Of a stretch of 64,000 nucleotides of DNA, positions 878 to 64,000 are shown piece by piece (position 1 is the first letter of the stretch; every line of letters starts with the position of its first letter). The stretch is from NCBI RefSeq assembly GCF_000315625.1, contig NW_005434647.1:522544-586543 (forward strand), in the 5' to 3' direction. This stretch comes from Guillardia theta CCMP2712. Its lineage: Eukaryota; Protista; Cryptophyta. Below the pieces are notes generated by a model, which was not told the DNA's origin, searched no databases, and saw only the letters and a program-made list of their open reading frames with translations. Position numbers and translations under genes: made by a program.

Positions 878-1984
878 ACGGTGAACTCAATACATTCGTT
901 AAGCGAGTTTCCGTCCCTTGCTACCTCACTCGAGTCGATCTTTTGGCATCTTTCTGGCCTCGTCTCTACCTTGCAAAGTTCTCATCATCCCTTCAAAGAT
1001 TGCTTGCCAGCTGCCTCTTGAGGAGCCATGCTCACAAGCTGCTGCTATCATGAGGATGGCTATGACTGTGCATTCCCAGGAGATGAGCGAACAACACTAG
1101 AGGAGGGTATGGGACAATTTTGCCAAGTCTCAGAGGGTCCGCCCAGGAGAGGGATAGAGCGACGTGGGATGGTAGTGAAAGGACGAGCATCGGGGTAGAG
1201 AAAGACAAGTCAAGTAAGATGAGAGAAGACCACAGTCTGATATCTTGCTGGAGAGATGAAACAAGACTGGAACACTGACAGTCTGATCTTGTTTTGAGTG
1301 CAGTCAGAGCGATCGAGATTGTAGAATCTCAAGCGGCGGAAGCTTCTATCAGCCAGACTGAAAATTGAGGGGTGGGGGGTGGGTAGAAGACTAAATGACA
1401 TGGTGGGTGATCCAGACTTTCTCTCAAAGGTCGCGCCATATTGACCTTTGTACCCACCCAATGAGCATATAAATACACCGGTGTCGCTTGGTTAAATGGG
1501 TCCATTCTAGGGGTAGAAGAAGAAGGGGTGGGGTAGGTCCTCATGGGGTTGTTCCATTTTGATCATCTTCACGTGCGACATGCCAATGTAGCGATGCCGA
1601 TTCATGCAATGCCAAGGACGAAGACATGAGGAGGAGAGGACGAGAGGAGTAGAGGAGTGGAGGAAGAGGTCATACGAGACCAGGCTTGACAAGCAAATGA
1701 ATAGGAAGGCAAGTAGGTTTTAGGAGAGGAGGGAACCTGACAGGACGAGAGAAAGAGAGGGGGATAAGAAAATCGAAGAGATCAGAAGCACAGAAGATGA
1801 CGATGAGAAAATTTTACCATGCACAAGCACAGATTATTGTAGGAGTTTCTCGAAGCATGATTATGAGAGTGAATACTGGGCCAGGATTGACAGGACAGGC
1901 ACACGACCTCTAATCTATACAGACTTGTAACATGTTGCAACTTCTCCATCATTTCTGATCTTCCATTGATCTTATTTTTACAGA

Positions 1985-4183: not shown

Positions 4184-4229
<46 letters not shown>

Positions 4230-5057: not shown

Positions 5058-5158
5058 ATAAAATGAAACTTGTAAGTGAAGATTCATGTAACACTAAAAC
5101 ACTTTCATACACTTTTATCGCTTTTATTCTCTCAAAACCTCACAAAAATAATATCGCA

Positions 5159-6064
5159 TTAGAAAGGAGGCTGCGAAGTGCCCTGTTCCCTCCTGTTCTC
5201 CTGCTGCTGGGTGGTGTAGGTGTAGGCGGGGTTGGCAGTGTAAGATCCATAAGGGTAGGCGTAGGAGTATCCGTACTGCGGCACAGCAGGGGTAGCAGCG
5301 GTGACTCCAGTCTGGTAGGCGGTGGTTCCAGGGAGGTAGTAGGAGTTGGTGATGGTGGGCTGGTACTCAACCACCTTGTTCACCGTCTGGACCGTGTTAA
5401 CAGTCTGGGTGACGGGGACCTGAACCTGAACGGGCTCCTGGACGGTCTGGTTGGTGTAGGTGGTGACGTTCTGGGTCTCGTAGTCGACCTTGGGGACCTG
5501 GTAGTTCTGGGTCTTGGTCTCGTAGACGGGAACGCGGTAGGGCACAGAGACGTCCTCGTAGACGGTCTTGGGGACCTTGTAGGTCTGGTAGCGAGTCTCG
5601 TAGACCTGCTTGGGGATCTGGATGGTCCTGGTCTCGTACTCAATCTTGGGGACCTGGTACGGCTGCTGGTAGGTCTCCATGACCTGAAACAACAACATAC
5701 ATCAGCGCCCATATCAAGGGGTGTGATGACGTCATAAATAGAGGTTGGCAAAGTTTTCTTCATAGATCATGTATAGAAACAATCATTCTGGACACAACAC
5801 ACAGCTATGCATCCAGGACAAGGAGAATTATCAAAAGAACAAGTTGCAAGACATTTGACTCACCGTCTTGGGAACGCGGACCTGGGAAACCTGAGGAACA
5901 GACACAACCTTGTTGACATAGGTGGTCTGGGGAACCATCACAGTCTGCTGAACAGGGACAGTGTAGGTCTCAGGGATGATGGCGCTCTGGGTGGGGAGGC
6001 CAGCAGTAATGCCAGGGGCAAGGGTCTGGGTTGGGTAGCCGTAGGAAGCGTAGGGCGTTGCCAT
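5159..6064 (-). CDS. Articulin/epiplastin-like V/P/Y/T/Q-rich membrane-skeleton protein (exons 6064-5864 and 5683-5159)
   Basis: MATPYASYGYP...VPQVSQVRVPKT | VMETYQQPYQVPKIEYETRTIQIPKQVYETRYQTYKVPKTVYEDVSVPYRVPVYETK. Roughly 12-aa periodic VPK/VPV-YET repeats with Tyr-rich ends and a canonical GT-AG intron. Confidence 0.7.
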
Positions 6065-8489
6065 GCTGCTGCGATGCTCTTCCGCTCCGCACGAGCCTCT
6101 CTTATACCCACGGGGCACAACACCCCCACCCCCAATCTGTCAGCCCACCCCTTGTTCCTCCGTTTTTTATTCGTACCCCCACCCTCCGAGCATAACGGTT
6201 CCACGGGAAGACCCGAAAGTACTTCTACACCCCTATTATCATTGAAGAAATAAGGGGTGGGCGATCATCTACTGAGCTAAAAGGACCCTCTCACCGTGAA
6301 TACCCCTAAGGTAGCAGTACCATTATTAATTTACCCCTACAAAACTACCCTCGCCCCTCCTCTGCCCTCCTCTTTCCTACCAGGATCTTACGCCTCGACA
6401 ACCTACCCCATCTCGAATGCCGAAGACACTACCCCATCTATTGTACACCCCATTTTTCTGGTACTGTGGAGTACCCTTCTACCCCCTGGTACTCCCTTGA
6501 CAGTAAGGCTCTACCACCCCTTTCAATCAGCCGTTACCGTCTTGGTAATGATCCCCAATAACCCCCACCCCTATTTTCCTAATACGACTCATGGGTCCTC
6601 CTCTCCTCCATGATCCTGCGGATCTTCGTGTTCTCGAAGGACCCCACTACGACCCCTACAGGCATCCCTGGATTCACCACCCCCACCCCCTCTGACAATT
6701 CCAAGAGATGGTAACTTTCAGTGAGACGCACCGGTAATGACCAGACATTTACCGGCTACTAGAGGGGGACTACCCACCCCCTTTTCACGAATCATTTACC
6801 GCTAAATTCACACCCGTAGTGACGTCGGTTACCCGGGGGTAACAATCGTCCGTGTACCCCACCCTCTAATATGACGACGGTCCCTGGGTGGCGCCCCCTT
6901 CCCGTTTGGGGCACCGGGCAGTTACTAAGTCTGATGAGCGGGTGCAGGTTACTGACAGTGAAATCATTGTACTGACCCCCACCCCCATGAGATGACCGTC
7001 TGACCCCGTGGCCCTCCCTATGGGCAACCTCCTTCCAGTACGGCGCCGTACTTTTATCATTCGAGAAGTGGTCCCCTGCCACTCGCAAGGACCCATAGTA
7101 TCTGGATACGGCTTGCCCTAAGAGTAGTACCCACCCCTCAGTCCCGTCCCCTGGTCAGAAGTTTCCCGCCGGGAGCTGCAAGTTGCCGCGAGTTGGTCAG
7201 AGGGGCTGAGAACAGCGCGGCGCCGGGGCCGGCTAGCCTGCACTGATTTGGGGGAAACTAGGGGAATAGTTCCATCGAAAGTTAAAGGCACCGGTACTTT
7301 ACCCTACAATGATACCAGGACCCCTGGGCCTACTAGGCTCACATTCCCGGCCACTGGACTGAGGAGTCCCGCCGGCCCTACTGAGAGTCGCCTACTCCGT
7401 GTAAGTTACAGAACGGCAGCACCGGGTACCCCCCCCATCCGGGGCTCAGGCTGGGGCCCGGAATAGTTCCCTGGCAGCGAAAGTTAAAGGCACCGGTACT
7501 ACCCTACAAAGATACCAGCACCGTGACCCCTCCTAGGCTAGGCCGCTAATTCCCCGCCCGGCGCCCCCCCCGCCCCCCCATCCTCTGGGGGTTCGTCGGC
7601 CCAGCCTCGGCTCCCGCAGGACTTCGGTACCGTGCCGGTTGTCGGCCCTCGGGAGCCGCTGGTGGCACGGCCGGGGGGAAACCTTATCATGCCGTCGCTG
7701 ATCGGATGATTTACAGGCTGAACTCAAGTTTTTCCGCCGTGCCAGGCAGTCACGCCAGGAGGCACGATGGTCAGCAGTGACCGGGTTGAACTACCCCTCC
7801 GAGGCTCCGGGCGACCGTAGGCTGCCAGGCACCGCCGGGCCCGGCCGCCGGGCCGCGCACTGGCGCAGTGCACGCGGCTTGAAGAAGAGAGCCGACCCCC
7901 ACTGAACTTCGGAACTGGAAAGCTTGTTTCCGGTCGCCGCGGCGGCGGACTCAGCCTCCGGGTGCGGCTGACGCCGGGCCTAGTGCTCAGCACGTCCCCC
8001 CAAAGGCCGCCTTTCAGGCTTCCCATCATCGCCCGGCCCGGCACTGCCATGATGGACTCTTGCCCGGACCGTACCGTACTCCGCGGCCGCCCGCCGATGC
8101 GTACGGTCACGTTGCGCTTTCTGTGCCCGGGCCACGCCGGTGACGGTGGCTGGCCGCGGATCCGCGCTCGGTATGCGTCTCATCATTCGGCGGCCGGGCC
8201 GGCCGGCCCGGCCACCGTCGGGACTCGGCTCGGACCTTCGGCGGCGGCCACAGCGCTATAGCGGCTCAGCGCCTGGCATGGCGCGGGGGATCTTCAAGTC
8301 TGAGTCTCGCCGTTCAACGTTTGGCCAGTGCTTGAGTAAAGGCCTGACGGTCCGACAGGGTACGGTCCCGGATCAACTTCCGCCGGGCCGGGCGCCGAGC
8401 ACTCAGCCTCCGGCATCGGAGTCGCCGCACCAGGCCGGGCCGCATCCAAAGCTTGTAACGGATGCGTAACGGTTGTTGGCTCTTCGGCC

Positions 8490-10652
8490 ATGGCTGGCGA
8501 TTACGGCAGTGCAACGGGGGAGGCGATGCATCGATCGCAAGAGAGGGGGGAAGAAAGCCGCCATGCTTGGTCGCGTGAGCTCTCCTCTCCCTCATCCACC
8601 TGCCTCTACAGTCGTGAAGGTCGTTATCTTCTGTTGGTGACCAACCTGGTGCTCGTCGCCGCTGTGCTACTGTCCGTTCCAGCTGTCAGCAGATCCATGT
8701 TGGCCTCATCACCCGCTGCCGTTGACGTCTCGCAGTTGGAGCAAGAGGCGAGCAAGGGCCTCCCGGAGGATCTTGCAAGGACACAAGAGCTGAGTGAGAT
8801 TGCAGAGGGCGGAGGGGGCAGAGGCAGGGTGCAGGAACTGTATGAAACGCCTACGATACATGTAGGAGGTCAAGGTTTCATTTCTAGCGTCGCCCCCGCG
8901 CATGGATGCGGTCCATCAGGATGTACCTCCATGTTTTCTTCTTCAGCTCCCTACACCCATGGCGTCGATCCCTACCCGGCCTCGGCTGCTCGTGCTGCTG
9001 TGGACCAGGAGTTGCCAGCAATCCGAGAGCTGATTCGCAAGGCTTCTGATGACGAGAGCTACAGCGTCGAAGAGGAAGAGAAAGAGATCGATACAGTTGC
9101 AAGCGCTTCCCGTGCAGTGGATAGACAGGTTCGACTAGCAGGCTTGTCAGTCGCTCTGTTCTTGATCTCCATTTTTCTAGATCTCCTCGTTCGACGACGA
9201 CATGCATGATGCAGCGAAGCGAACGAGAGAGCTTGTACCTGACTGACATATTACCGTTCCACCGTTGAATCCCTCCCGACAGGTGCACGAGCTCGAGAGG
9301 GTGAGGAGCATTGGATTGACCGCAGGACCCCCTGGACGGAGAGGCCCCCCTGGTCCACGAGGACAGCCAGGCCCTCAGGGGGTAGGGATACCAGGACCAC
9401 AAGGAGCGATCGGTAGCGCTGACCTTCTACTCGAGTCGAAGATCTTGTAAGCTGCTCCATGCAGGGAACCCCGGGCTTGAGGGGCCACCAGGCCCTGACG
9501 GACCAGAAGGGCTGCAAGGAGCAGGTTGCGCGAGAGGCGTCGCCTCGAAATCAGCTGAGCTGTGTGTAGATGGCCTCGTTGGACTCCCAGGACGGACTGG
9601 ACCACGTGGCAGGAGGGGACGAGCGGGTCTGCCCGGGCGAATGGGCAAGAGAGGACCTCCTGGCAAGCCTGGTTATCCTGGGCCGCAAGGATTGATGGTG
9701 TGTTGTCACCTCGCGAACATCTGTTGTAGCTCATCAGTGAGCAGGGCCCTGCTGGTGTCCCTGGACTGAACGGCAAGCATGGGCCCATGGGACTTCCTGG
9801 TGCTCCCGGCACGCCAGGGCAGGTGAGAGCTGATCCTCCGCCGGGTCGGTTGCGCTCTGATGCCCCCCGACTCACTCCTCGTGTTAGTCCGGTCCGGTGG
9901 GCCCGCGGGGATTCGCCGGCCCTCCAGGCGTCCAAGGGCCCGTGGGCTTGCCTGGTCAGACTCGCTGCCATGGATTCTGAAACTGATTTTGGTTGAAGGC
10001 GCCATCGGACCTGCTGGCATCCCTGGAGTGTGGGGGAGACCTGGGGAGCAGGGAACTGACGGACAAGAAGGGAACGCCGGTAGAGGAGGCCTTGGAGCAA
10101 GGAGATGGGCTAACAACATTGAGCAGGTGCCCCTGGACCTGCAGGATTGTCTGGCAAAGGAGGGCAACGTATGCCTTGAGTTCTTCTTAGAGTCTCGCTG
10201 ACGAACGAATTTCTTGCTGCTCAGCTGGAGTGCCTGGAGTCCCGGGCATGATGGGAGCAATGGGTCCAGCTGGAAACGACGGTGTCAAAGGTGGCCAACA
10301 GCAGCAGCATTCCTTGCATGGCCTTTCTCATGTTCTGCCCACCTCTCAGGTGCGAAGGGCCCTCAGGGTCTTGGACTAGTTGGAGCCACAGGATCGCCGG
10401 GTGTCGCCGGAGTCCCCGGCCGACAAGGAGTGCCCGGCGTACCGGGCAGGAACGGAGTTATGGGAGTGCCTGGAGTGCCGGGCTCTAACGGTAGGAACTT
10501 GGCAAGGTGGAGGGTGAGTGGTCGCCTGACCAGCTGTAGGTATCAACGGATCGCCCGGAGCTGCCGGAGCGCCTGGAGTACCTGGAAGGAACGGACACTC
10601 AGCAGGCTGTAACTATGCTTGCTTGCGTCGCTATGGGCACTGCCACTGCTAG
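8490..10652 (+). CDS. Collagen-like (Gly-X-Y) type II membrane/secreted protein with Cys-rich C-terminal tail, multi-exon
   Basis: N-terminal hydrophobic anchor (YLLLVTNLVLVAAVLLSV) and a helical neck, then about ten short exons that splice into near-continuous G-X-Y (GPPGRRGPPGPRGQPGPQG...GVPGVPGSNGINGSPGAAGAPGVPGRNG). Ends HSAGCNYACLRRYGHCHC* with TAG at 10650-10652. Confidence 0.85.
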
Positions 10653-10807
10653 AGCAGAGAGCGACTTGATGTATCATAAGCGTCTAGAGGCGGGGGAGAA
10701 TGAACAGGATCAGAAACTCGACCATTCATCGTTGAGTGAGGTTTTCTTAACATAAGAGACGAAGGGGAAGTGTTGAAGCCTGAACATGAAGGGCCGGGAA
10801 GAAGAGT

Positions 10808-15175: not shown

Positions 15176-16726
15176 TCCTTCAACCTCGGGCAAGTATATG
15201 CAAGCGAGTTGAAGCTATTTCATCTTGTGAGCATAATCATTTGAGCTGCTTGTCAACGAGCCATCCTTTCTATCTCCAATCTGACATATATCATGCTCTA
15301 CATGCTGCTTGTTGCGCCTGCGTTTAGGTCGGTCGGTCAACCACAGTACGATGTAAGCTCAATGGACGATGTGTCTCCCTATAATCAAAACTGAATGATC
15401 CACCAAACTTGTACCCGCCAACCCCGACAAATGCCGATGATCAGCTCCTCTTACTTTTGCTGTCCTCTGCTTGCGTCTATCTCTTCTCTCCTCCCCTCCT
15501 TGACTAAGACCTCCTGTCTTGCTTCGGCTTTACCATGCTCAACCCAACGCAAGTTGGCATTTCAACCCGCTCGAAAAACCCCGACCCCAAAAATACTCTA
15601 CCCCACCCTCATCATTTCCAGGATATACCCTACCCCACCCCTTGACAGTCCTACAGCAGCAATCACTACTACCTCCTCCAAGACCATTTGAACCTCCTCT
15701 ATACCACCGGTTAACATCCTCGTGTCCCTATAACCCCACCCATTTCCATCGCTTTGACCCCCTTTGAGCCCACTACGACCTTTCCATCCCCACACCCTCC
15801 TACGAGTACCCACCCCCATCTCGTCACGACTTCCAAAGATCTTTTCATAACCCCCCACCAGTTAATTTACACTACCCACCCACCCCCAATAATGAACTCG
15901 CTAAACCCTTTGTAAAACAGGACTCCCCATGTTGAAACTGTCCCCCTATCCCCCATACCCACCCCCACCCCCACCCCCCCACCACCCGAATAATTTCACT
16001 ACCCCTGGGACAACGATCCTTGGAAAGGCCTGATGAGCCTCGGAGAGCCAGTGAGCGGCCCGGCCGGCCGCGGGGCCGGTGGCCCAGTTTGGGTTGGCCC
16101 GGGCCGGGCGGCCCGAGGACTCCGACTCAGGCTCTGAGCCGGCGGGCGGGCGGCCCTTCCGAAGTTCGTTGCCCTGGCCCACTGTTAGTATCGCGGCGGG
16201 TGCTTTCGGGCCAGTATGCCGGCGGCGTCTCCGAAGTTTGAACTGGGCTTCGGCCACATCATGTGCTGCGCCCGGTTGGCCCACTGGCATGGCGCCGGGC
16301 CGCGGGCGCGGCCCGGCCCGGCGGGCCTGCTCACGCCACTGGGCCTCCCGAGTCACTGTAGAGTCACTGCCGTATCCGATCTCTCAGGCCCTTGAGTCGC
16401 AGTGCGGCGACAGGGTCCCGGCCCGATACTGTCATTTTTGACGGACTCTTAACAGGCTTTGCCAGGTAAGAACTGAGACCATTCCATGCGCCCGGGGCCG
16501 GTGCCGGGGCTTCTTTCAGGCTCAAGTAAATCAGTCCGATCACTACCCTGACCCTAGTCACGGTACGGTACGTACGGTATCAGGCAAGTTTCTACTCCGT
16601 AGGTCACTGTGGGCCCCCCGGACCGTACGGTACCGTGGCAGCAGTTCAGTGGCCGCAGGACAGGCTCCGGGGAGGCCCGGGGCCGCCCGGGACTTCCCGG
16701 AAGTCCGTGACTGCTCGAGTCCCGAA

Positions 16727-16840
16727 GTTTTCTCTTCTCGCCGTTAGGTTTGGCCTGTGCGACAGCCTGAAAGCCTCCTCGACTCTCCTGATTGTCCTCG
16801 TACTGATTTTTAACCATCTGAGTACCGTACTGATCAAGCC
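16727..16840. repeat. Dispersed repeat, copy A
   Basis: TTTTCTCTTCT.GCCGT...TGGCCTGTGCGAC.GC and AAGCCTCCTC.ACTCTCCTGATTGTCCTCGTACTGATTTTTAAC recur at 37366-37600. Confidence 0.8.
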
Positions 16841-17134
16841 TCCGCTCATTGGAATTGAACTTTCAAGATGATCATATAGAGGGCCGGGCGGGCCTGTGTG
16901 GGGAAGTGGACCGCACGGCTCAGACCTTCGCTTCGCGATGTGCTAAATCGGGCAGTAGTGCCGTATGACTATTCCTTTCCGATGGGGGGTAGGTCAACAT
17001 ATACTTTTAATAAAGGATTGAAAGTTTCATCTTACTTTTCATAGCTATTTGAAAATATAACAGTAAATAGATCAGCCTTTGGTTGAAATTTCTGCCTGTG
17101 TCTGCTTGCCGCGAAACTCCTCAGTCACACCGCA

Positions 17135-21392: not shown

Positions 21393-21426
<34 letters not shown>

Positions 21427-24535: not shown

Positions 24536-25766
24536 GTTGCCGCGAGATGCACCCAAGTCGCCTGATAGCACGCCGATCCGATCCAAACTGCTCGCGATTG
24601 ACGATGAGAAGAACGATGGAGGTGGTAAGAAGAGAAAGCAGAACGGTCAGAAAAGATGCATCTGAGAGGTTCAACAGGAAGCTAGAACCCACGATCCGTT
24701 GCCAGTATGCGCAATTATGGGGCGGGTTCGGGTCTGATCCCTGAGCTGTGAACAAGAAGCGAATCACTCGAACATCTGTAACAGCTGTCTGATGATGTTC
24801 CAATCACTTGGTCTTGTTCCTCTCCTCATTCCGCCTCCTCCGCCTCCTCTTCCTCCTCGTTTCTTCTCCCATGCAAGGTACCAACATAGCGCATGGCGAC
24901 GATGAGGCCTGTTATAAAGAAAGAAAATCTGAAATCTTTTTATAAAATTTGAAAATTACAACCAACTTTTCTGTAATATCCCTTGGTTTCAACATTGTAG
25001 CCAAACAACCATGCAGACTGGATTGTCGAAATATTTTTATCAAAATTTCAATATTGCCTATAATATTTCAAAGGTAATCCAAGAATAACAAAGGTGTCGC
25101 CGAATCCTGACCAGGCCATCCTCAGAGCTTTGGGGGCCACCGGCGGCCCGGGCCGGGCCCGCCTGGCGCGGCAAGCGAAGTGCTCCGAGGCTGCCGCCGA
25201 GTCACTGGCAAGCCAGCTGTGCTGACTCCCGCCGGCATGATAAGCCGACAGGCCTGGCTCGGTTCCAAAGTGGCCGGTTGAACTGAGGAAGCCTTAAAGT
25301 TTGACCCGTCGGTCCGTTATTACTAAGCCCCGTACTAGCACTGTGAGCCCCGCGCGACCGGGCCGTGAACTGTCTGATCGGATCAGTGGAGGAGTACGAT
25401 CCGACGGACCGTACGGCACGGTACCGGGACCGTACGGTCGGTGTACCGTACGGTACGGCCGCCGGGGTACGGTACTGTACGGTCAGTGTCCGATCCGGGG
25501 TACTACGGCGGTCGAGTTACGGTTACATATCCGTTAGGATCAAACTACTGCTACACCAGCCTGACGGTGGATGGGCGCAACGAGACCAGGCGGAGGTCCT
25601 TGGAAAGTACGAGGGTGGGTGGGGTCCTCAAAATGACCAGGGGTGGTAACCTCAGGAGCCTAGTTTTGTACTGAGAAACTTAAAAGCCGAGGGGTCAGGT
25701 GTCTGGGGTAACCCATGTAAAAATCATTGGGGGTAGGGGTAGTTGACCATCGGACCACAAACCAAC

Positions 25767-32888: not shown

Positions 32889-33654
32889 GTCACGAAATTG
32901 CACGTGTTTTCAGTCAACTGCTGATGATCGGACTGTACTGATCGAAAGGTCCGAGGCACCGGATGATCTCAGTGATCGGACGGTGCCGCGCGGTGCCGGC
33001 CGGGCCCGGGCTTGAGTCCTTACCGTACGCCGGGTACGGTACGGTACTGACCGTCGGACTTCTTTTCTCAAAGTTAAAACGGCGGAATTCCCCGGGGGCC
33101 GGGCCAGCCGCCGATAGCGGCGGACTCCGGCGGGCGGCCGGGCCACGGCCGCCGGTGATGGGTTACGGTCAGGGTTCAAACGGTTCAATCATGGCATGAA
33201 CTTCGGGATGTCAGGCTCACTGGCACAGTTGACGCAGTTGAACTTCGAAGGATATCAAAATTGAGCAACGTCATGGTATTACGGTATCACTGGACGGTGA
33301 CCGTACGCATCCGATGATCACTGTTACCACTGGGCCATGCCAGACTCCGAGGCTCGGACGGACTACCGTGGGCGGCGGCCCTCAGGCTTGCGGCCGGCCG
33401 GCCCCGGCCCGGCGGACACTGACCGCGGCATCACCGTCACGGAATCAACTTCATGATTACCCTCACTACCAAGATCATCATGTGCAGCTGGACTCAGTAC
33501 AGCTCTCGTCAAGATGACTTTTCATTGAATATCTCAGGTTTCAAATAAACAATAACGTGCCAGTGCTTCTGACCGACCCGGCAAAATGGTCGAGCTCTAC
33601 CGTACTCCGAGAACGAATTTCGAGTACGAAATTCTACGCGAGTAGGCTTTCCAC

Positions 33655-34781: not shown

Positions 34782-35600
34782 TCACAAAATTCCCACAAAA
34801 TTGATTTAGCTTGAGACCGAAAAGACACTGCCACGCTGCAACAACAGTCAATGAAATTGTCTAGATCTTGAATGGACTTCGAATTCAATTTGCTGGGCAT
34901 CTCACAAAGACATCTTCACATAGGAAAGCAGCTACGAAAAAACGAACGGGACGTTTGCAACACAACAGGACTGACAATCAATCATCATCAATGACGCAGT
35001 TCAAAGTTAAGAGTACAGGTGAGTAACAATGAAATTTGTGATGGTGAAAGATGTGCGGGAAAGACCAATGCACAGTGAAGGTTTGATGTTCAATTCTGTC
35101 GAGTGGACGGAGCGCTGAAGACAAAAACTTTGTGCAACACAACACCTAGGACGCAAAGGGCAAAGGACATAGCTTGGTGAAGGGAGGGGCGGGGGAGGGG
35201 GGATGAGGAGAGAAAACTGCAGTGATACAGCAGTGTCCTGCAAAGAAGCAGAGAGGGTGATGGAAGCAGAGAAGCGTTGAAGCAGGAGCAACACAACGCT
35301 TCTCAGCCGCAACATAGGCATGGAGGGTATGAGTTGGTCTGCAGGGGGGCTAGAGTGACCTTGAGAAAGCCTGTCGGGAGGCGTCAGAAATGAGAGAGAG
35401 AAAGGAATAATGGAGGGTAGGGTGATAAAATAACAGGGTAGGGAAAACGTTTTTTCCTCAGTACCGGTTATTTCTAAGGACTAATCAATGGTATAGTAGG
35501 GGTGTTCAAGCGGCAACCCTTTTTTGGAAATGGTGGGTGGTTGAAATGAGTGGGTAGGGGTATCAGGAAATCTCCATCTGATCTGGTACAATCTCGACTC

Positions 35601-35720
35601 TATAAGTAATTTAAGATGCTATCTCGTTACATATACAAACATATGTAAATGGAATAATGTGAAATCGTAACGATTCAATTCCCTTCGATTGATCGCGCGA
35701 GCATTAAATTTGTACTTATA
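35601..35720. mobile_element. Possible small AT-rich MITE/foldback element
   Basis: Ends TATAAGTAATTTAAGATGCT and AGCATTAAATTTGTACTTATA are imperfect inverted repeats. Internal TCGTTAC/GTAACGA and TACATAT/ATATGTA also pair. Confidence 0.4.
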
Positions 35721-37365
35721 AACATGGGGGCAAAATGAAGGACCACCCCACCCTCAGTGGTCCTGAGGAGTTCTGCCTGTGGGTTGACAGTCAGCACGAT
35801 ACCACCCCGTTCAATAACACCCACAACTCTCCTCATTGACCCCTTTGAAAGAAGTAATTCGTACCCCACCCACCAAAGTACCCCTCCAAGTTAACCCACC
35901 CCACCTGCACCAGCCCCAATCCCAATCGCCCCCCTCCATCTGCCGACCCTTGAGTGTCGGTATTTTGGCCCCTTTCTTGGAAAAGTAGTTTTTAATTCAC
36001 TCCTACGTACCCTTCAGGTTTGTAGATGCTCGAATTTGTGGTACAAATATTTGCTCAAACTTATTTCTTTAGAAAGGATTATGCCTTAGAAGTATTGTAT
36101 CAATCTTGATTGGCTTCCTACGTTTCAATTGAAATAAAAATTATACTGGTACCATCTTAAAAAAGCATGTACTACCTGCCTCGCTTTGACCCTACCTAAC
36201 ATCGCCCCCCAACTGTTCCCAGGAAAGTACCCCTCCAATAGAATAATACATGGTATTGGTGACTCATATCTAGAAATCCTGGTTTGGCCCCCCTCCTCGT
36301 ACTAATCTCGTTAGATCTCCCGACCCTAGGAAAAATCATACTTTTATCGTCCCACCCCTGTCATCCATAACCCCAGATTTTCATAGATTCAGGGGTCATC
36401 AAGTATGGTACACCGAAGCGTCCCATTTTCTATTACAGTGCCGGGGGTCCCAGTACGTCCCGTTGATGACAACAGGCGACCCCCTAAGTTTTAAGACTTT
36501 GTAACGGTTTCCGGATTCCGATCAACTGCCATCCAGTGCCCCGTCCCCATTTGCCCCTGATCCTTACCAACATCCCTGCCAACATCCCCTTGCAGATCCC
36601 CATTCTGGTCACCCTGTCCCCCAGCCTGTCTCCACCACGATCCTGCCAGGAACCCCATCCTTGTCTCCTTGCCTGCCCATACCCCAGCCACAGCCCGCCC
36701 GCGAGCCAGGTCGCGGCCTACAACATCCGCATGTTACGACGAGGATCTTCAACCAGCTATTAGCAGATATTCTTTTGTTTTCTGATTTTGTTTGTTGAAA
36801 GTGAAACAAGGCTACTATTCTAACTGTCTTCATGTTACGTGACATCACCCCAATACAAACTAAAGGAAAGGAATTTAGAACCCGAATGAGTCTCATCACT
36901 GAAGCAGCCTCGGAGTCAAGGAGACCCTATTGAGCATGTGTGCTGGTGATTTCGTCAACCCACGCTGCCACTCTGGGTTAGTTCAGTGAAGAAGAGGAGA
37001 ATTTGAGAGCTCTTGTAATGCTTGACACGAAGCCTTCGAGAATAAGATACTTCACAAGCACAGGAACAATGAGGAGTTTCTTTTACTAGAACACAAGCAG
37101 GGCAGACGCTAGGATATGAAGCGCTTTGCCTGCCACGAACACTTTATGCCTACGGCATGAGCCTGCATTTGGTGTTCACAGATGTATTTCTTGACTCAAA
37201 TAATGAGTCATGATGGGATGGTCGGAACTTGTATCAGTGATGCCACTTGACAGTGAGCCTGCGGCCGCTTGAAAGCCTTGATTCGGACTCCCGGACCGTA
37301 CGGTAGTGACGAGCCTCGGAGAGCAGACGGCAGGATGCCAGGCACGGTTGTTTCTCGCTGCTGTC

Positions 37366-37600
37366 TTTTCTCTTCTTGCCGTCATAGTCCCAGTGATGGC
37401 CTGTGCGACTGCTTTACTCAAGGTTAAATAAAAAATCAGTACTACGGTACGAGGACAATCAGGAGAGTAGAGGAGGCTTGACCCTGACCCTGACGCAAGC
37501 TTCCACTTGTAGAGTCAAGCCTCCTCTACTCTGAGAGTCTCAGCCTGATTGTCCGGGAGTCCCGGCGTACTGATTTTTAACTAAACTTTGAGTCAAGGCG
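37366..37600. repeat. Dispersed repeat, copy B, containing a long imperfect inverted repeat
   Basis: Left arm ACTCAAGGTTAAA..AAAATCAGTAC..GAGGACAATCAGGAGAGTAGAGGAGGCTTGAC pairs with right arm GTCAAGCCTCCTCTACTCT..CCTGATTGTCC..CGTACTGATTTTTAAC..TTTGAGT. Confidence 0.85.
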
Positions 37601-38283
37601 AGTACTACTACATGATCGGATTCTTCTTTCTTTCTTTTTTTTGGTCCCCCGGTGCCTCATCCGGCGAGTCGGTTGGATCCGATGACGGCCGCCCGGCTCC
37701 GGAATCACTCAAACTGGCTTGAAACCATTGAGAGTCGGGGGCTTTGACCCTCACCTTGCAACTTCTCCCGTCAGCCCCCCCGCCACGTAACCAGTAAAGA
37801 TGACGGCCGCTTGTCACCCGGAGTCGAACTGCCTCATGATAACACTCTATTTCCCCGTCAGCGGGAGAAAGACATGAGCGAGAAACGCAACGGTTGAGGA
37901 TGGGGGCACAACTGCAGGAGCATAAGTGATGATATCTTTTTAGGGGGCAAGATGTACCTCCAAGTAGAGGTAGGGGTAGTAACATAGGAAAGGAAGGGGG
38001 TGGGTGGTTATTCACTTTACTCGAGGCGCCAGCGGCAGTCACTCCTTTCTCCCCCGCTCCTCCTCCCCAACTTACCCCCTTCCAGCCGCTCTTCTCTTTA
38101 CACCCGCCCCCTCCTTCTCCTTCTCCATCTCCTCCATCGCTCTTACTCCCCTACCTGCACACTTCTCTTCCTGCTCTTTGCACCTCTGTTGTATTTCCCG
38201 TCTTCACCGTCCCTTCTTACATCCCGCATTTGCCACCCTCTACCACGTGCTCTTCGAGTGTACTTCCCCGTCTCCCAACAACC

Positions 38284-44302: not shown

Positions 44303-44589
44303 GAAGCTTGAAGACGATGAAGTTCTTCTATCCTCGCGTCTCTCTCCTTCCTCCTCCTCCTCCGCCGCCGCCGTCTCCGCTAACTCCAAACATGGCAACG
44401 GTCTCCACGAACCTAGGGTCACTGTGCTGCCCTTTTCATTCGGGTAGAAAAGCTAATTCAAAGTTTCTGTCTTTTATGAAATCGATCAAAAGTAAGCGAG
44501 GTGAGCTTGCTTTCTCTGATGCAAACTCACCGGGCCCGGGGCCCACGCGGCGGCCCCGGCGGGCCTCGAGCGGACATGAGGGGGGTGAG

Positions 44590-47519: not shown

Positions 47520-48247
47520 GGCAGGTACAGGGATCGAAGGAAGACTGGGTTTGCTTGGTAGGAGGAGGGGAGGGGAACGGCTGTGGCAACGGGAGGAGGG
47601 GGAGGAAGAGATTACTGGATGGGACGGGAGGGAACCTTTTGATAATCAGGTTCCCTACCCTACCCCTAATACCCTCCAGTACCCTTACCCCCTTAATTCC
47701 CATTAAGTACCCCCTGTTATCTCACCACCTCAACACCAATTTAACCAGGAATTTTTTCTTACCACCCCTTTTCGTGACAACCGACTATGAACATACCAGT
47801 AGTAGGGGTACTCCAAGTTTAGGCGGTCTGCAGCAGAGAAGGAAGGGGTTCAGCGACAGTAGAAAGTAGGGGTGTACGTTGAAAAGGTGATACAGTCACA
47901 GGGGTGGGGTGGAGCTGAGCTCGGGTGGTTCAGGTAAGTTTGTGGGAATCAAGACCAGTGATGTTGGCAGACCAGAACTTCAGACTTGTGACAGCCTGTC
48001 CTCGAGTCCAGCTGGCAGCTCAGCTGAAGGCCTCATGGCACCGTGACCAGGTGACCGTGCCTGACTGTCAGTGACTCCGGGCGGCCGGCCCGGGAGGGGA
48101 CGGGCCCCGGCCCGCGGGCATGATCCGGTCCGGCGGCGATGCCATGATGCACGAGTGCCCCGGCCCGGCTCCGAGTCAGTGCTAGTGTGTGTGTATCATA
48201 GTAGGTAGTTGCGTGATTCACTGCTCTCGTCTGCAGCAGGAGAAGCT

Positions 48248-51200
48248 CTAGTTGCCTCCGGCGAATCGCCCGCCAGCCTTCTGCCCGTTGATGGCGAGGA
48301 GGTCGACGTCGAAGACAAGCTAGAGTTGCGATCAGAGTGAGGAGGGAGTGGAGGGAGGGAAAGAGATGGTTGAGGGAGGGCGGGAGGCCCCGGAGGAAGG
48401 GCAGGAGATAGATAAGAGGGATGGGAGGAGGGGAAGAAGAGGAGGAGAAGGGAGGAGGAGAAGAGAGCATTACCTCAGCGTTGGGGGGGATGGGGCCCTG
48501 GCCAGTGGCGCCGTAACCGTACTCAGGGGAGATAACGAGCTGAGACTTCTCGCCGAGGGACATCTGAGGCCGGAGGTGAGGGGAGGGAGAGACAAAAGAC
48601 GAGCGGGGAGAGGGAGGAGGAGGAGGAGAACGAACAACAGGGGGAGGGGAGGGAGATCAAGGAAGGAAGGGTTGAGATGACAGGGAGAGGAGGAGGTTGA
48701 CCTGAAGGACTCCCTCATCCCACCCACGGATAACCTGAAAGAGCGAGCACAAGAGTCAGGCGTTCGGGAGGAAAAAGATGGAAGCAGAGGAGAGGAAGAA
48801 ATTAGAGAGGCGAAGAAAGCGAGGGAGGAGGAGCGGAGCACGGCAGGAGAATCTTTTCACCTGTCCGGTTCCCACTTGGAAGGTGAAGGGGGGACCGCGC
48901 TTGATGCTGGAATCGAACACCTGCTGGGGTTCAGCTAGGAATGGTGGGGCCTTCCTCCTTACCTGCTTGGTGGCCCTCAACTTGCCGACGTAGTGGACGG
49001 TGCAGACATCGCCGGGCTGGAGGAGGAGGTGAGAAAGAGAAGAGGAGGAGCAAGGAGGACAGAGGACGAACTGGTACGAGGATAGGAGGAGGTGCAGACT
49101 GAGGGGAGACACAGAGGGAGAGGGGAAATATTAGAGGAGCAGGGATGCAGGGAACATGTGGAGATGAAGGAGGGAGGAAGCAGCAAAGGAGGCGTGAACA
49201 ACACGAAGAGGATAGGAGGAGGAAGGGAGAACACCTGAGGGTAGTTGATACCGTCACCGCGGCGAATCTGAGTGACCTTGACGCCGCTGCCAGCGCAGTA
49301 AGGAAAGAGCAGAGCAGGAGAGAGGGAGGAGGAAGGGGGAGGTTGTCATGGTCAGAGAAAGCGCAAAGGAGGGAAGGAAGGCAGCGTTACGCACGAGACA
49401 GGAGCAGCAGCACGTGGCTGAGCGGCAGGTTTGGGGGGAGCCCTGGAGGGCACTGCGGACTTTCCGCCAGCAAGAGAATATCCCTACAGAGCATGCAAGA
49501 GTCAGGTACAAGCCGAAAATATGCTGTGCCAGTAGAGGATGAAGGAGGAGGGAGAACGAGAACACGACAGGTGGTAGAAGGAACGAGAAGAGGGAGGGGG
49601 GGGGGGGGAGCGAATGAGCAACGGGTAAGTAATGGAGGGGAGGAGAGAAGAGGAGAGGAAGCAATGATTGACCTTGATCTCGTCACGCTGGGACTTCATC
49701 ATGAGCTGACGAAGCTCCTTTTCGTCCACCTCAACCTGACAGGAGCTCTCACTTGAGGTTTGTGATAGGAGAAAGCCGATAACGAGGAAACTTGACAAGG
49801 ATCATGGAAAGCAACATCCCAGAAGGGCAAGGAGCAGGAAGTAAAGAGGAGGAGGAGCAGGACGAGGACGAGGACGAGCAGGAGGAGGAGAAGGAGGAGC
49901 AGGAGGAGGAGTTACTTCGTTGCTGGTGGCCTTGGCTGCTGGCTTGGCAGCAGGAGCGCTAGGAGCGCCAAACCCTCCAAATCCTCCAAAGAGGCCTGAA
50001 AATCAACTAAGGATCAGGACAGAGACAAGGAGGGTGGGGAGGAGGAAGTGCAGGAGGAGGAGGAGCGAAGAAAGGGCTGAGAGCGCGGAAGAGGCAGCGA
50101 AGTAGAGGCAGGAGACCTCCAAAGGGGTTGGCAGGCGCTGCTTTCTTGGCGGCCTGCTCGGCTTCGATCCTGTCACACTGTAAGCCAATAAGCGCGCATG
50201 GTCACTTCCAGTCCTCCACCTCGCTGCCTCTGCTGCTGCTGCCTCGGCGGCGGCGGCGGCGGCGGCGGCCTCAGCCTCGAGCCTTCTGGCCTCAGCCTGC
50301 ATGACAGTGAGGAAGAGAGATGGGTGGAGCCAAAGCGGGCGCAGAAGGAGGAAGAGAGGAGGAAAAGGAGGAAGGAGGGATAAAGATCAGAACCTCAAAA
50401 TCTTGCTGCTGAACATTCTTGGCGGGAGCTCCAAATCCACCGAAGAGACCAGCGAAGGGGCTACGCGCACTCCCGTCATGCATGCTCGTCATCACAACTC
50501 TCTCTCACTTGGCAGGAGCAGCAGGAGCCGCTCGTGGTGGAGCTGCAGCCTTGGGAGGGGAAGGAGGGGCAGGAGGGGCAGCGGCAGCCTTAGGAACAGC
50601 AGCCCTTGGCACAGCACGAGGGGCAGCCTGACCGGCGATTAGAACGCAAAATCCTTGCACTTTGTGATCTTGCCTTGGGTACAGGGGCAGGAGGAGGAGT
50701 AGGAGGAGGCGCTACGTCTTCAGCCTCGAAGACCTAGAGGGCATCCAGTCATAACAAGCTCCTCCTCCACGTTGGCTGTCACCTCCTGTTTTGGCGCCTG
50801 CTGCGCTCCTCCGAACCTGCAAGTTGTCGTCAGCCCAACGCGTCTACTGCTGCTGGTCCCACAGGTTGCCGAAGGCGGCGAAGGGGTTGGCGGGGGCGGC
50901 GGGGGCGGCAGGTTTGGCCTTGGGGGGCCTTAGGATAAAGTCAGACGAGATGAGAGGGTAGGAAAGGAGAGGAGAGGGGGAGGAGAGGAGAGGGGCAGGA
51001 GAGGGGCAGGAGAATGAAACGATGGAGAAGAGATGGAAATAGAGGCGGAGGAGACGATTCGGCTCACATCTTTCCAGCAGCGCGCAGAAGCTCCTCGTAC
51101 TCCTCCTGACTGATCTCCTCATACTGCTGCATCTTCAAGGAGCAAACAGGCTTGGGGCTGGCCTGGACAGCAGGAGGAGGGTCATCGAATATGCTCATCA

Positions 51201-51429: not shown

Positions 51430-52376
51430 TTCACACGAGGAGGAAAGGGAGTGTACAACGGATTCAAGGAAATTTGGGAAAGAGAGCAGGAGAACTGAGG
51501 AAAAGACACAACATGCTTTCGTCAATACAATTATTGTCCTTTTGGTGCATTGCGATCTCTTCCTCCTCCCTCCCCCCCTCCTCCTCTTCCTCTTCTTACC
51601 GCTACTTTCGCCATTAGAAAGGCGTCACGCTCAAAGCGGCCACCCCACCCCACCCTCATACTGAACAGACACCACCCTCTCTCTCGTTTTTCGATCTCCA
51701 CCTACAATTAGGACCAACTGCACACTGACTACCCTGAATTGCTTTACACCACCCCTTAATTCACTACATATTACCCCACCCTATGTTATCTCACCAGCTC
51801 CAGGTGTTGCCTGCACCCCTTGGTCTCCAGCCCCCACCTACCCTTTCTCACCCCCTACCCCAGCAATAAATTACAACTGCCTCCTTACGACTACCCCCTT
51901 TTGGAATTGAGGACCCTTGAAACTACCCCACCCTTCTGTAAACTTCACCCCCTGACCCACTACCCCCCTGTTTAGCCCTCAACAGCTCGCCTCCTTTATA
52001 TGACTCACCCCACCCCAAGGTCCACCCCAGTCTCCTCATGAGAGCTACGCCGCCGCCCTGGCCCGGGCCGCCGGTCGGCCGGGCCCTCTCACTGCAGCCC
52101 CGGGGCCGGCCTCTTGAGTGAGGCCGGTGGTCCGGGGGCCTGATCAGACCGTGCGGTCAAATTTTTGACTTTGGTCAAAACAGAGGTCAAATTTGACCCC
52201 AGTCAGTGTTCAAACTGCTTGTTTGTACGGGGGCACGTGCATTCAGTACTGTTTAAATTACTTTTAAGAATATAATATTTTGAAGAACGTGATCAACCCC
52301 CATTTAAGTGTCACCACCCCTGGATCCTAAAATCCTGAGGGGATGGTACTCCTTCAATATGTGAGACACCCCCTCA

Positions 52377-52880
<504 letters not shown>

Positions 52881-63761: not shown

Positions 63762-64000
63762 TGTGGGAAAGGACAGAGGGGTTGAGGAGAAGGGAGGAGG
63801 CGACGTGAGAGGCTCAGCTTGTCCTGCTCGACAACTCCGCGGACAGGAGGGCGAGGGGAGCACAGGAGGCCCAACGGACCAAAAATCAAAACGGCGTGTG
63901 AATTCAAAAAAAACTGACTACTGCCCGCCGGGCCGACTCTTGGCAGAGTACAGTGATCGGACCGTCGCCGGCGCCGGGGGGCCCGGGGGGGGGGGGGGGG

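What the first reader, a model, noticed from the sequence alone, without database searches (positions are those of the whole stretch)
6100..8480. Recurring tripartite intergenic blocks: ACCCC/GGGGT flank plus a palindrome-mosaic core
Seen: similar non-coding architecture recurs at about 6100-8480, 15400-17000, 25100-25750, 32930-33500, 35400-38000, 47600-48200, 51600-52480 and 63920-64000. Cores are mosaics of short palindromes and restriction-like words (CCGG, GGCC, GGGCCC, GTAC/CGGTACCG, GATC, GAGTC/GACTC, CTNAG, GTGAC/GTCAC), with stutters such as CGGTACGGTACGTACGGT near 16561 and GTACCGTACGGTACGG near 25443. Flanks are ACCCC/TACCC-rich, usually G-rich on the sense strand of the adjacent gene. 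The blocks are not alignable copies of each other. They lie upstream of or between gene starts and are absent from the tight tail-to-tail junctions. Inference: a site-directed mutational system repeatedly rewrites these spacers, for example staggered cuts or transposon excision followed by fill-in or hairpin repair, and may build promoter/boundary chromatin. This is the best candidate here for an undescribed system.
Basis: partly seen in the sequence, partly recalled or inferred. Interest (0 to 1): 0.8.

Follow-up and report, generated by a model that had tools for sequence, protein, structure and literature searches.

The report
Palindrome-packed promoter islands in Guillardia
The non-transcribed DNA in front of most genes in this stretch of the alga Guillardia theta has two unusual parts: one-stranded swarms of ACCCC motifs, and GC-rich islands packed with tiny perfect palindromes that nearly always have a C or G in the middle, which suggests a local DNA copying or repair error keeps adding them.

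Summary
The window is Guillardia theta CCMP2712 nuclear DNA (scaffold JH992991.1, 100% identical).

They have two modules:
- **A-tracts:** strand-oriented swarms of YACCCC/GGGGTR motifs, 0.13-1 kb long. ACCCC occurs 90 times against 5 on the other strand.
- **B-cores:** GC-rich islands with all dinucleotides near expectation. CpG o/e is 0.94, against 0.67 in coding and other non-coding DNA.

Cores lie upstream of at least one gene start (nine of nine on my partly inferred gene map). None lies at a convergent junction. Block 6100-8480 sits between two divergent, expressed genes and shows essentially no RNA.

It is an excess of odd palindromes with a C/G centre:
- 5-mers XY-S-Y'X': 595 seen against 222-350 expected, and all 16 arm types are enriched.
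- A/T-centred odd palindromes show no excess.
- Density is 48 per kb in cores and 7.6 per kb outside.

Copies of one dispersed 200-bp element differ by 11-nt inserts; I decomposed one into inverted copies of its flanks.

Best reading: these are promoter islands remodelled by short-range template switching or fold-back repair. A site-specific cutting system is not supported. The mechanism is inferred, and nothing outside this window was tested.

The parts
6085..7150 (-). A-tract of block 1. A swarm of YACCCC motifs on the + strand, so GGGGTR on the sense strand of the minus gene whose transcript ends at about 6080.
   Evidence: 51 C3+ runs against 12 G3+ runs. Motif counts. No RNA over it.
7151..8480 (.). 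B-core of block 1. A GC-rich island with undepleted CpG that abuts the start of the plus (collagen-like) transcript at about 8475. It contains two ~100-bp direct repeats, 7273-7322 and 7475-7522.
   Evidence: 69 C/G-centred odd palindromes with arm >=3, or 52 per kb. Repeats. RNA depth about 0 over 6182-8348. Independent contigs of run X2 match 7770-8332 exactly; across 7424-7644 they match apart from a 2-nt homopolymer change and one substitution.
15390..16000 (-). A-tract of block 2, upstream of the minus fn3/kinase gene.
   Evidence: 34 C3+ runs against 0 G3+ runs. Sequence.
16001..16960 (.). B-core of block 2. It holds element X at 16617-16814 and the stutter ACGGTACGGTACG at 16560.
   Evidence: 48 C/G-centred odd palindromes per kb.
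25090..25560 (.). B-core of block 3, with GTAC-rich pentamer repeats at 25428-25480.
   Evidence: 47 per kb.
25561..25760 (+). A-tract of block 3, G-rich on the + strand, directly upstream of the plus gene I place at an ATG at 25768.
32930..33440 (.). B-core of block 4, with no A-tract. It lies upstream of a minus gene that I infer from sequence (ATG at 32888, first exon followed by gtaag) and downstream of the 3' end of the RWP-RK gene.
   Evidence: for the sequence. 62 per kb over the wider 32880-33520 span.
35720..36700 (-). A-tract, C-rich on the + strand, left of core 5. No annotated gene abuts it.
   Evidence: 43 C3+ runs against 4 G3+ runs. Sequence.
35300..35560 (+). Short G-rich A-tract whose orientation does not fit the nearest known gene start (RWP-RK, minus strand, 34781).
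37230..37830 (.). B-core of block 5. It holds element X at 37290-37581, an inverted partial duplication at about 37410-37516, and two 11-nt inserts at 37533-37543 and 37555-37565.
37880..38010 (+). A-tract, G-rich on the + strand, upstream of the plus Myb gene (38284).
44528..44572 (.). Mini-core (CCGGGCCCGGGGCCC...) between the start of the minus polymerase lambda gene (about 44422, inferred from a BRCT ORF) and the plus ankyrin ORF (44801).
47640..47930 (.). Two back-to-back A-tracts. 47640-47770 is C-rich on the + strand and fits the DUF2828 gene (start 47519). 47790-47930 is G-rich and its orientation is unexplained.
47990..48260 (.). B-core of block 6. It sits at a tandem junction, upstream of DUF2828 and downstream of the 3' end of FKBP.
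   Evidence: 70 per kb..
51640..52470 (.). Block 7. C-rich A-tract at 51640-52030, core at 52040-52140, AT-rich GGTCAAA palindromes, then a second C-rich A-tract at 52290-52470 in the 'wrong' orientation for the plus gene I place at an ORF ATG at 52907.
63920..64000 (.). Start of a further core, cut by the window end.
1000..1750 (+). Weaker G-rich A-tract upstream of the plus DEAD-box helicase gene (1984).

Best explanation
These are the non-transcribed 5' intergenic (promoter-side) regions of the Guillardia theta nuclear genome. They are built from two modules.

(A) Next to many transcript starts lies a strand-oriented swarm of YACCCC motifs. The G-rich strand is usually the sense strand and runs away from the core. 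Inferred: this is an array of sites for a general DNA-binding factor, or a nucleosome-excluding tract.

(B) Further out, or abutting the other gene of a divergent pair, lies a GC-rich island with undepleted CpG. Shown: it is saturated with short perfect odd palindromes that have a C/G centre, and with 2-3-unit pentamer repeats (GGCCC, GGTAC).

Inferred: this texture comes from a local but ordinary kind of replication or repair error. That would be short-range template switching, or fold-back (snap-back) synthesis at nicks or breaks. It inserts inverted copies of the adjacent few bases, pivoting on a G:C pair. Repeated events make nested palindromes and pentamer stutters, and keep the island looking young (all dinucleotides near expectation). 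The process is not aimed at specific words. The 'restriction-like' words are simply what C/G-centred palindromes of all kinds look like.
For: Identity and context:
- The window is 100% identical to GCA_000315625.1 scaffold JH992991.1.
- In block 1, transcript contigs end at about 6080 (minus gene) and begin at about 8475 (plus gene). RNA depth between them is about 0 in three RNA data sets.
- Cores lie only at promoter-side junctions.

The palindrome signal in cores:
- XY-S-Y'X' 5-mers: 595 seen against 222 (dinucleotide model), 350 (trinucleotide) and 345 (maximal order). All 16 arm families are enriched. Arms containing A/T: 312 against 150.
- A/T-centred odd palindromes: 133 against 116-132.
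- Arm >=5: 34 with a C/G centre against 2 with an A/T centre (p = 2e-5).
- With arm >=4, a 1-nt spacer gives 100 against 42 expected (z = 9.7). Spacers of 7 nt or more show no excess.
- Density is 47.9 per kb in cores and 7.6 per kb outside. 33% of core bases lie inside such a palindrome, against 5.7% outside. The statistic alone re-finds the strong cores and weakly flags the two small ones.
- There is no such signal in A-tracts, in coding DNA, or in an unrelated eukaryotic locus, L004.

Direct events:
- Element X at 37495-37610 differs from two other copies by the inserts GAGAGTCTCAG and GGGAGTCCCGG.
- The first insert reads G + revcomp(ACTCT) + C + revcomp(CTGA), so it is copied from both flanks in inverted orientation.
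- A third copy carries the stutter CGTAC[CGTAGTAC]TG.

Composition: all dinucleotide o/e values in cores lie between 0.88 and 1.13. Elsewhere CpG is 0.67 and TpA 0.3-0.5.

Literature: template switching is a described source of perfect inverted repeats, including near yeast promoters (PMC7954356 and PMC13100816, abstracts seen).
Against: - Only 64 kb was analysed. I could not fetch other G. theta loci, so the genome-wide claim rests on unchecked first-stage notes.
- Only about three insertion events were seen directly, and they have no outgroup to set their direction.
- No strain comparison was possible. Run X2 may be the same strain.
- Known template-switch events usually leave spacers of several nucleotides. 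I have no tested reason for the 1-nt spacer or for the C/G centre.
- 14 of the 36 long odd palindromes have the form 4-nt palindrome + S + the same 4-nt palindrome. For these, tandem pentamer slippage explains the pattern as well as inverted copying.
- Mirror repeats are also somewhat enriched, which shows some low complexity.
- The orientation rule for A-tracts is only 7 of 9.
- About five promoters lack cores.
- The function of either module is untested.
Confidence: 0.5

Rival explanations
1. This is purely a regulatory vocabulary. Cores and tracts are dense arrays of transcription-factor sites held by selection: GTAC-core, GGNCC-type, and bZIP/STAT-like odd palindromes such as TGASTCA and TTCCSGGAA. 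No special mutational process is involved.
For: - The blocks lie strictly on the promoter side of genes.
- A few words recur in most cores: GCCGGGCC in 7 of 9 and ACCGTACG in 5 of 9.
- Many dimeric factors bind odd palindromes with a C/G centre (established knowledge).
- The A-tract motif is strongly oriented.
Against: - The excess covers all 16 arm dinucleotides, and 88 of the 128 possible 7-mers occur, so no small set of factors explains it.
- Arm lengths run on to 8-11 nt.
- Copies of one element differ by inserts templated from their own flanks.
- The cores are not alignable with each other.
Confidence: 0.22
2. A hairpin-forming or staggered-cutting nuclease, a domesticated transposase, or repeated transposon insertion and excision is targeted to these spacers and rewrites them.
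For: - From my recollection of hAT (Hermes) chemistry, a hairpin made with a 1-nt offset would give an odd palindrome whose centre is one original base pair. This matches the form flank + pivot + inverted flank of the insert at 37533-37543.
- The signal is sharply confined to the cores.
- The strong bias to a C/G centre hints at a chemical preference.
Against: - No recognition word stands out.
- I saw no target-site duplication, terminal inverted repeat or transposase gene in the window.
- Simple fill-in cannot make odd palindromes (my reasoning).
- There is no polymorphism evidence.
Confidence: 0.12
3. These are decayed or fragmented copies of short mobile elements (MITE-like, or GC-cluster-like palindromic elements) that prefer promoter DNA.
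For: - A ~200-bp element is shared colinearly by blocks 2 and 5, with an inverted partial copy.
- 13-18-nt modules are shared between several cores.
- Mobile palindromic GC clusters are known in yeast mitochondrial DNA and in Volvox organelles (recalled knowledge).
Against: - Self-BLAST finds only two alignable pieces among all the blocks.
- Decay would destroy perfect palindromes rather than keep them.
- No terminal repeats or target duplications were seen.
- A scan of metagenome contigs for the element found nothing.
Confidence: 0.1
4. This is an assembly or sequencing artefact in GC-rich DNA.
For: One run gives fragmented coverage of the core.
Against: Independent contigs from a 2011 run match 7770-8332 and 6687-6903 exactly. 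Across 7424-7644 they differ only by a 2-nt homopolymer change and one base.
Confidence: 0.02

Closest known systems
CpG-island and bidirectional promoters of vertebrates
   Same: GC-rich islands with undepleted CpG (o/e 0.94 against 0.67 around them). They sit at 5' ends, often between divergent genes, and are not part of the mature transcripts.
   Different: These islands are built from C/G-centred odd palindromes and pentamer micro-repeats. TpA is also undepleted. They come with oriented ACCCC swarms up to 1 kb long. Methylation state is unknown, and about a third of promoters lack them.
Short-range template-switch mutation (quasi-palindrome correction; PMC7954356, PMC13100816)
   Same: It creates or perfects short inverted repeats from local sequence, is reported near promoters, and gives multinucleotide inserts templated in inverted orientation.
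   Different: Here the density is extreme: a third of core bases lie inside such a palindrome. The favoured spacer is exactly 1 nt, its base is C/G in 34 of 36 long cases, and the signal is confined to discrete islands.
Polymerase-theta end joining with snap-back templated inserts, and P-nucleotide additions at opened hairpins (V(D)J joints, hAT excision footprints)
   Same: Inserts of about 10 nt made of inverted copies of the bases next to the junction. By my recollection of the chemistry, a hairpin with a 1-nt offset predicts an odd palindrome.
   Different: No target-site duplications, recombination signals or element ends were seen. The enzymology was not tested.
Mobile palindromic GC clusters of yeast mitochondrial DNA and palindromic repeats of Volvox organelle DNA
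   Same: Short GC-rich palindromic units that pile up in intergenic spacers.
   Different: These are nuclear and promoter-associated, there are no alignable unit families, and the palindrome arms are of nearly every sequence.
General regulatory factor sites: yeast Reb1 (TTACCCG), Rap1 and Tbf1, and the plant telo-box (AAACCCTA) with site II (TGGGCY)
   Same: C-rich, oriented motifs just upstream of transcript starts that co-occur with GGGCC-type words.
   Different: The motif is YACCCC. It comes in swarms of tens of copies over up to 1 kb. The cryptomonad telomere word CCCTAAA is not enriched. No binding factor is known.

Membership tests
Transposon or MITE family (decayed copies) | Copies align to a common consensus over most of their length | tested here: not met
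   Self-BLAST among the blocks gives two hits only. Short modules of 13-47 nt and one ~200-bp element are shared by two blocks.
Transposon or MITE family (decayed copies) | Terminal inverted repeats and target-site duplications at the copy ends | tested here: inconclusive
   None were seen around element X or the two 11-nt inserts. With only 2-3 copies the ends cannot be defined.
CpG-island promoter | GC above the surroundings and CpG o/e above 0.6 over more than 200 bp | tested here: met
   Cores have GC 0.64 and CpG o/e 0.94, against 0.67 in coding and other non-coding DNA. Most cores are 260-1330 bp long; two listed ones are shorter (a 45-bp mini-core and one cut by the window end).
CpG-island promoter | Located at gene 5' ends | tested here: met
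   On my partly inferred gene map all nine cores lie upstream of at least one gene start, and none lies at a convergent junction.
CpG-island promoter | Unmethylated in a methylated genome | not testable with these tools
   No methylation data were available. CpG depletion outside the cores is only indirect evidence.
Site-specific restriction-like or nuclease-targeted words | One or a few recognition words stand out from words of like composition | tested here: not met
   All 16 XY-S-Y'X' families are enriched 1.1- to 3.2-fold over maximal-order expectation. Even palindromes show no excess over that model.
Template-switch or fold-back mutational footprint | Inserted bases are inverted copies of adjacent sequence | tested here: met
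   Insert 37533-37543 reads G + revcomp(ACTCT) + C + revcomp(CTGA). Insert 37555-37565 appears to mix direct and inverted flank bits, traced only partly. Only about three events were seen.
Template-switch or fold-back mutational footprint | Polarised excess of such events against an outgroup or in mutation-accumulation lines | not testable with these tools
Structured RNA gene or element | Transcribed, with folding more stable than shuffled sequence or a match to a known family | tested here: not met
   RNA depth is about 0. Rfam gives nothing, even at E <= 1. Folding z-scores run from -1.7 to +0.1, like coding controls.
G-quadruplex promoter tract | Four G3+ runs with loops of 7 nt or less | tested here: not met
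   Only about 5 canonical motifs fall within 4.8 kb of A-tracts, no more than elsewhere.
Telomere-like or telo-box repeats | The organism's telomere unit (TTTAGGG in cryptomonads, PMC3622300) is present in the tracts | tested here: not met
   CCCTAAA/TTTAGGG occurs 3 times in the window, with only one copy at the edge of an A-tract.

The most novel reading that the evidence does not exclude
Guillardia theta, and perhaps cryptophytes in general, may have a promoter-localised process that generates palindromes. Candidates are a hairpin-forming nuclease or domesticated transposase, or nicking at C/G (for example during base excision or demethylation) followed by strand-switch synthesis. Such a process would build and renew CpG-island-like promoter cores de novo, so that promoter sequence is written by a mutational machine rather than inherited base by base.
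Probability: 0.2. Interest if true: 0.85.

Novelty: new variant of a known kind. Interest (0 to 1): 0.6.

Why it matters
I found no published description of cryptophyte nuclear promoters. Seven literature searches found none, but the 2012 genome paper is not in the held library.

If the pattern holds genome-wide, G. theta offers three things:
- A simple sequence statistic, the density of C/G-centred odd palindromes, that marks promoter islands.
- A natural case where a template-switch-like process has shaped a whole class of regulatory DNA. This bears on how CpG-island-like promoters and dimeric factor sites can arise.
- An oriented ACCCC swarm that may be a lineage-specific promoter or boundary code, useful for building expression tools in cryptophytes.

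Tried and rejected
- **Fungal or nematode origin.** Rejected: the window is G. theta CCMP2712.
- **tRNA, Rfam or spliced-leader genes in the blocks.** None found. The leader CTCGGCGGCTGGTCAAG (PMC5619915) is absent.
- **Bacterial-type promoter and terminator scan.** At chance level.
- **Palindromes as a class against high-order Markov models.** Even palindromes show no excess once trinucleotides are modelled. This is what led me to the odd palindromes.
- **Stable single-strand structure.** Not unusual.
- **G-quadruplex and telomere-word readings of the A-tracts.** Not met.
- **Outron or spliced-leader reading of the A-tracts.** Transcript contigs show no extra 5' letters, so there is no support for it, but it is not excluded.
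- **Gene calls by exact-ORF look-ups.** Three failed. Two look-ups through homologues worked.
- **Independent G. theta loci through paralogues.** The third homologue search returned no G. theta protein.
- **Metagenome scan for element X.** No hits.
- **Metagenome relative L003 (67% identical kinase).** It is much more GC-rich, and its odd-palindrome excess is weak (z about 2), so it is inconclusive.
- **L004.** An unrelated eukaryote, used only as a negative control.
- **Two scripts timed out** and were rewritten.
Full report
**Identity and gene context**

The window has about 55% GC, long ORFs and very short GT..AG introns of 44-65 nt. A polymerase lambda ORF and a kinase ORF found Guillardia theta CCMP2712 proteins as their best hits. 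The loci fetched for those proteins are 100% identical to the window. It is scaffold JH992991.1 of GCA_000315625.1, and window position equals record position minus 522543.

I built a working gene map from four sources: the record's gene calls, Pfam hits on ORFs, a codon-usage scan and laid RNA.

| Gene | Strand | Position |
|---|---|---|
| DEAD-box helicase | + | 1984-5057 |
| small gene | - | 5110-6080 |
| collagen-like gene | + | 8475-10840 |
| fn3/kinase | - | 10930 to about 15200 |
| unnamed | + | 17204-18580 |
| large low-complexity gene | - | 18632-24586 |
| unnamed | + | 25768-27447 |
| unnamed | + | 27855-28805 |
| SAM-domain gene | - | 29051-29989 |
| unnamed (ATG at 32888, inferred from sequence) | - | leftwards from 32888 |
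| RWP-RK | - | about 33658-34781 |
| Myb | + | 38284-38859 |
| unnamed | + | 39319-41614 |
| polymerase lambda | - | 42015-44422 |
| ankyrin ORF | + | 44801-45109 |
| DUF2828/DUF7788 | - | 45636-47519 |
| FKBP | - | 48248-49702 |
| unnamed | + | from 52907 |
| oxoprolinase | - | 54265-60973 |

**The main block is a silent divergent spacer**

I laid four runs on 5000-10900.
- RNA contigs of the minus gene end at 6075-6080. Its ATG is at 6064, it has an intron at 5682-5861, and its poly(A) site is near 5108.
- RNA contigs of the plus gene begin at 8475, with the ATG at 8490.
- Between 6182 and 8348 the two RNA contig sets have zero depth and the raw RNA reads about 0.1.
- A separate DNA run (X2) matches its laid pieces exactly apart from a 1-nt and a 2-nt change in C-runs (6123, 7571) and one substitution. 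It may be the same strain, so it says nothing about turnover. It does rule out an assembly artefact for those pieces.

**There are two modules, not one**

A 250-bp table of word counts separates two kinds of DNA.

A-tracts are swarms of a strand-specific motif. ACCCC occurs 90 times on one strand and 5 on the other. TACCC occurs 55 against 3. 8-mers such as ACCCCACC (14 in tracts, 1 elsewhere) and TACCCCTA (8 against 0) are nearly confined to the tracts. The logo around C4 runs is YYA-CCCC, with A at position -1 in 79% of cases. Runs are 4-30 nt apart with unique sequence between them. The tracts are not the cryptomonad telomere word (TTTAGGG; PMC3622300) and hold few canonical G-quadruplex motifs.

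B-cores are GC-rich (0.64). GCCGGGCC and CCGGGCCG occur 21 and 19 times in 7 of 9 cores and never in the other 53.8 kb. ACCGTACG and GTACCGTA occur 13 and 10 times in 5 of 9 cores and never elsewhere. All dinucleotide o/e values in cores lie between 0.88 and 1.13. CpG is 0.94 and TpA 0.95. In coding and other non-coding DNA, CpG is 0.67 and TpA 0.3-0.5.

**Position**

Cores lie at 7151-8480, 16001-16960, 25090-25560, 32930-33440, 37230-37830, 44528-44572, 47990-48260, 52000-52260 and from 63920. On this partly inferred map every one is upstream of at least one gene start, at a divergent or tandem junction. The convergent junctions (5057|5110, 10840|10930, 18580|18632, 28805|29051, 41614|42015, 45109|45636) are short and carry neither module.

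Several caveats apply.
- About five promoter-side junctions have no core, for example those upstream of the oxoprolinase gene and of 39319.
- The G-rich strand of a tract is the sense strand of the nearest gene in 7 of 9 scorable cases (p = 0.09).
- It points away from the core in 8 of 10 cases.
- Only block 35720-38010 has a tract on both sides of its core, so 'tripartite' is an idealisation.

**What the palindrome mosaic really is**

Against a dinucleotide model, palindromes of 4-10 nt are 1.3-3.3 times enriched in cores. Against third-order or maximal-order models, even palindromes show no excess.

The signal that survives is a different one: odd palindromes with a C or G in the middle.

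| Measure (in cores) | Observed | Expected or comparison |
|---|---|---|
| 5-mers XY-S-Y'X' | 595 | 222 (dinucleotide), 350 (trinucleotide), 345 (maximal order); z = 11-21 |
| same, arms containing A/T | 312 | 150 |
| same, arms all G/C | 283 | 195 |
| 5-mers XY-W-Y'X' | 133 | 116-132 |
| arm >=3, C/G centre | 240 | 104 |
| arm >=5 | 34 C/G-centred, 2 A/T-centred | binomial p = 2e-5 |
| arm >=4, spacer exactly 1 nt | 100 | 42 (z = 9.7) |

- All 16 arm dinucleotides are enriched.
- With arm >=4, spacers of 0 and 2-6 nt give 1.2-1.8-fold and spacers of 7 nt or more give nothing.
- Already at the trimer level, Y-S-Y' is 1.4-2.0 times the dinucleotide expectation, and Y-W-Y' is 0.8-1.1 times.
- The density of arm >=3, C/G-centred palindromes is 47.9 per kb in cores (27-70 per kb in each core) and 7.6 per kb outside.
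- A 500-bp sliding count of this one statistic re-finds the strong cores and only weakly flags the two small ones. GC-matched coding windows score like background.
- One third of core bases lie inside such a palindrome, against 5.7% elsewhere.
- A-tracts, coding DNA and an unrelated eukaryotic locus (L004) show no such signal.
- 88 of the 128 possible 7-mers of this kind occur.

Part of the signal is pentamer stutter. Of 24 tandem duplications of 5 nt in cores, 19 are GGCCC-type or GGTAC-type. 14 of the 36 longest odd palindromes have the form 4-nt palindrome + S + the same palindrome, so for these tandem and inverted duplication cannot be told apart. Mirror repeats are mildly enriched too. 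The other 22 long palindromes have arms that are not themselves palindromic, so they are true inverted repeats.

**Direct view of events**

Blocks 2 and 5 share a colinear element of about 200 bp, at 16617-16814 and 37290-37581. Block 5 also has an inverted partial copy at about 37410-37516.

Compared with the other two copies, the copy at 37495-37610 has two inserts.
- GAGAGTCTCAG at 37533-37543. I read this as G + revcomp(ACTCT) + C + revcomp(CTGA). It is therefore an inverted copy of both flanks around single-base pivots, and it creates three overlapping odd palindromes (ACTCT-G-AGAGT, CTGAGA-G-TCTCAG, TCAG-C-CTGA).
- GGGAGTCCCGG at 37555-37565, replacing one T. I traced it only partly; it appears to mix direct and inverted copies of flank bases.

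The inverted copy carries the stutter CGTAC[CGTAGTAC]TG. Between two conserved modules, the block-2 copy holds about 35 more bases than the block-5 copy. These are GC-rich palindromes such as GGACTTCC-C-GGAAGTCC.

These are few events and they lack an outgroup. They do show that palindromic micro-insertion happens in the cores.

**Interpretation**

That the blocks are promoter-side, non-transcribed regulatory spacers is well supported. What each module does is inferred.

For the cores, four properties fit a mutational footprint better than a vocabulary of factor sites: independence from arm sequence, growth of the excess with arm length, the sharp preference for a 1-nt centre, and the flank-templated inserts.

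The known processes that copy adjacent bases in inverted orientation are these:
- Short-range template switching, also called quasi-palindrome correction (PMC7954356). It has been proposed as a driver of promoter evolution in yeast (PMC13100816). I read only the abstracts of both.
- Snap-back synthesis in polymerase-theta end joining (recalled knowledge).
- Opening of hairpin ends (recalled knowledge).

Working through hAT-type chemistry from memory, a hairpin made with a 1-nt offset would give an odd palindrome. This is reasoning only, not a test.

I found no sign of site specificity and no transposon ends or target duplications. By my reasoning, simple fill-in of staggered cuts cannot make odd palindromes. 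So the 'site-directed system' is not supported, while 'a local process that writes palindromes' is.

Why the centre is C/G remains unexplained. Two ideas are priming stabilised by a G:C pair, and nicks at C or G made during base excision.

The neutral dinucleotide composition of the cores fits either young DNA with fast turnover or islands protected from methylation.

**Limits**

- The analysis covers one 64-kb window.
- Other first-stage notes report the same architecture elsewhere in this genome. They are unchecked, and I use them only as leads.

Noticed in passing
window 8475-10840: The collagen-like gene has at least 12 introns of only 44-65 nt (GT..AG) and is highly expressed. The public annotation holds only a 97-aa fragment of it, at 10251-10652.
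   Followed up: partly
window 45636-47519: A single 627-aa ORF (DUF2828 + DUF7788/VWA) is split into two gene models in the public annotation, at 45636-46493 and 46719-47456.
   Followed up: partly
window 12954-15193 and 43439-44422: Coding ORFs upstream of annotated models appear to be missing 5' parts of those genes: fn3 repeats before the kinase gene, and a weak BRCT match (E = 0.007, below the Pfam cut-off) before polymerase lambda.
   Followed up: partly
window 52555-52665: A perfect (AGCAG)n microsatellite of about 20 units lies in the purine-rich leader upstream of the plus gene I place at 52907.
   Followed up: no
window 52140-52200: An AT-rich run of GGTCAAA words, including the 14-nt even palindrome GGTCAAA|TTTGACC, sits right after core 7. 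It differs in kind from the C/G-centred palindromes.
   Followed up: no
window 37195-37215: A TGACTCA and TGAGTCA pair (bZIP/AP-1-type odd palindromes) lies 9 nt apart, just left of core 5.
   Followed up: no
window 5326-5990: The DNA run and both RNA contig sets contain a contig that leaves the window sequence at 5326 and 5990, and a joint that skips 5348-5966 with GT..TA ends. This may be a paralogue or an odd isoform of the small minus gene.
   Followed up: no
window 54102-54201: An assembly gap of 100 N lies at the junction between the plus gene ending near 53894 and the 3' end of the oxoprolinase gene.
   Followed up: no
L003 520-700 and 900-960: A metagenome contig encodes a 67%-identical kinase from a much more GC-rich relative. 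Its non-coding stretch has a similar vocabulary (CCCCGTACTAA twice, GAGTC/GACTC-centred inverted repeats, a CCCTAC-rich C-tract). Its odd-palindrome excess is only z about 2.
   Followed up: partly
window 48000-51000: Strong purine excess on the + strand (GC skew +0.2 to +0.4, AT skew up to +0.44), although the annotated FKBP gene there is on the minus strand. The gene content of 49700-51500 is unclear.
   Followed up: no
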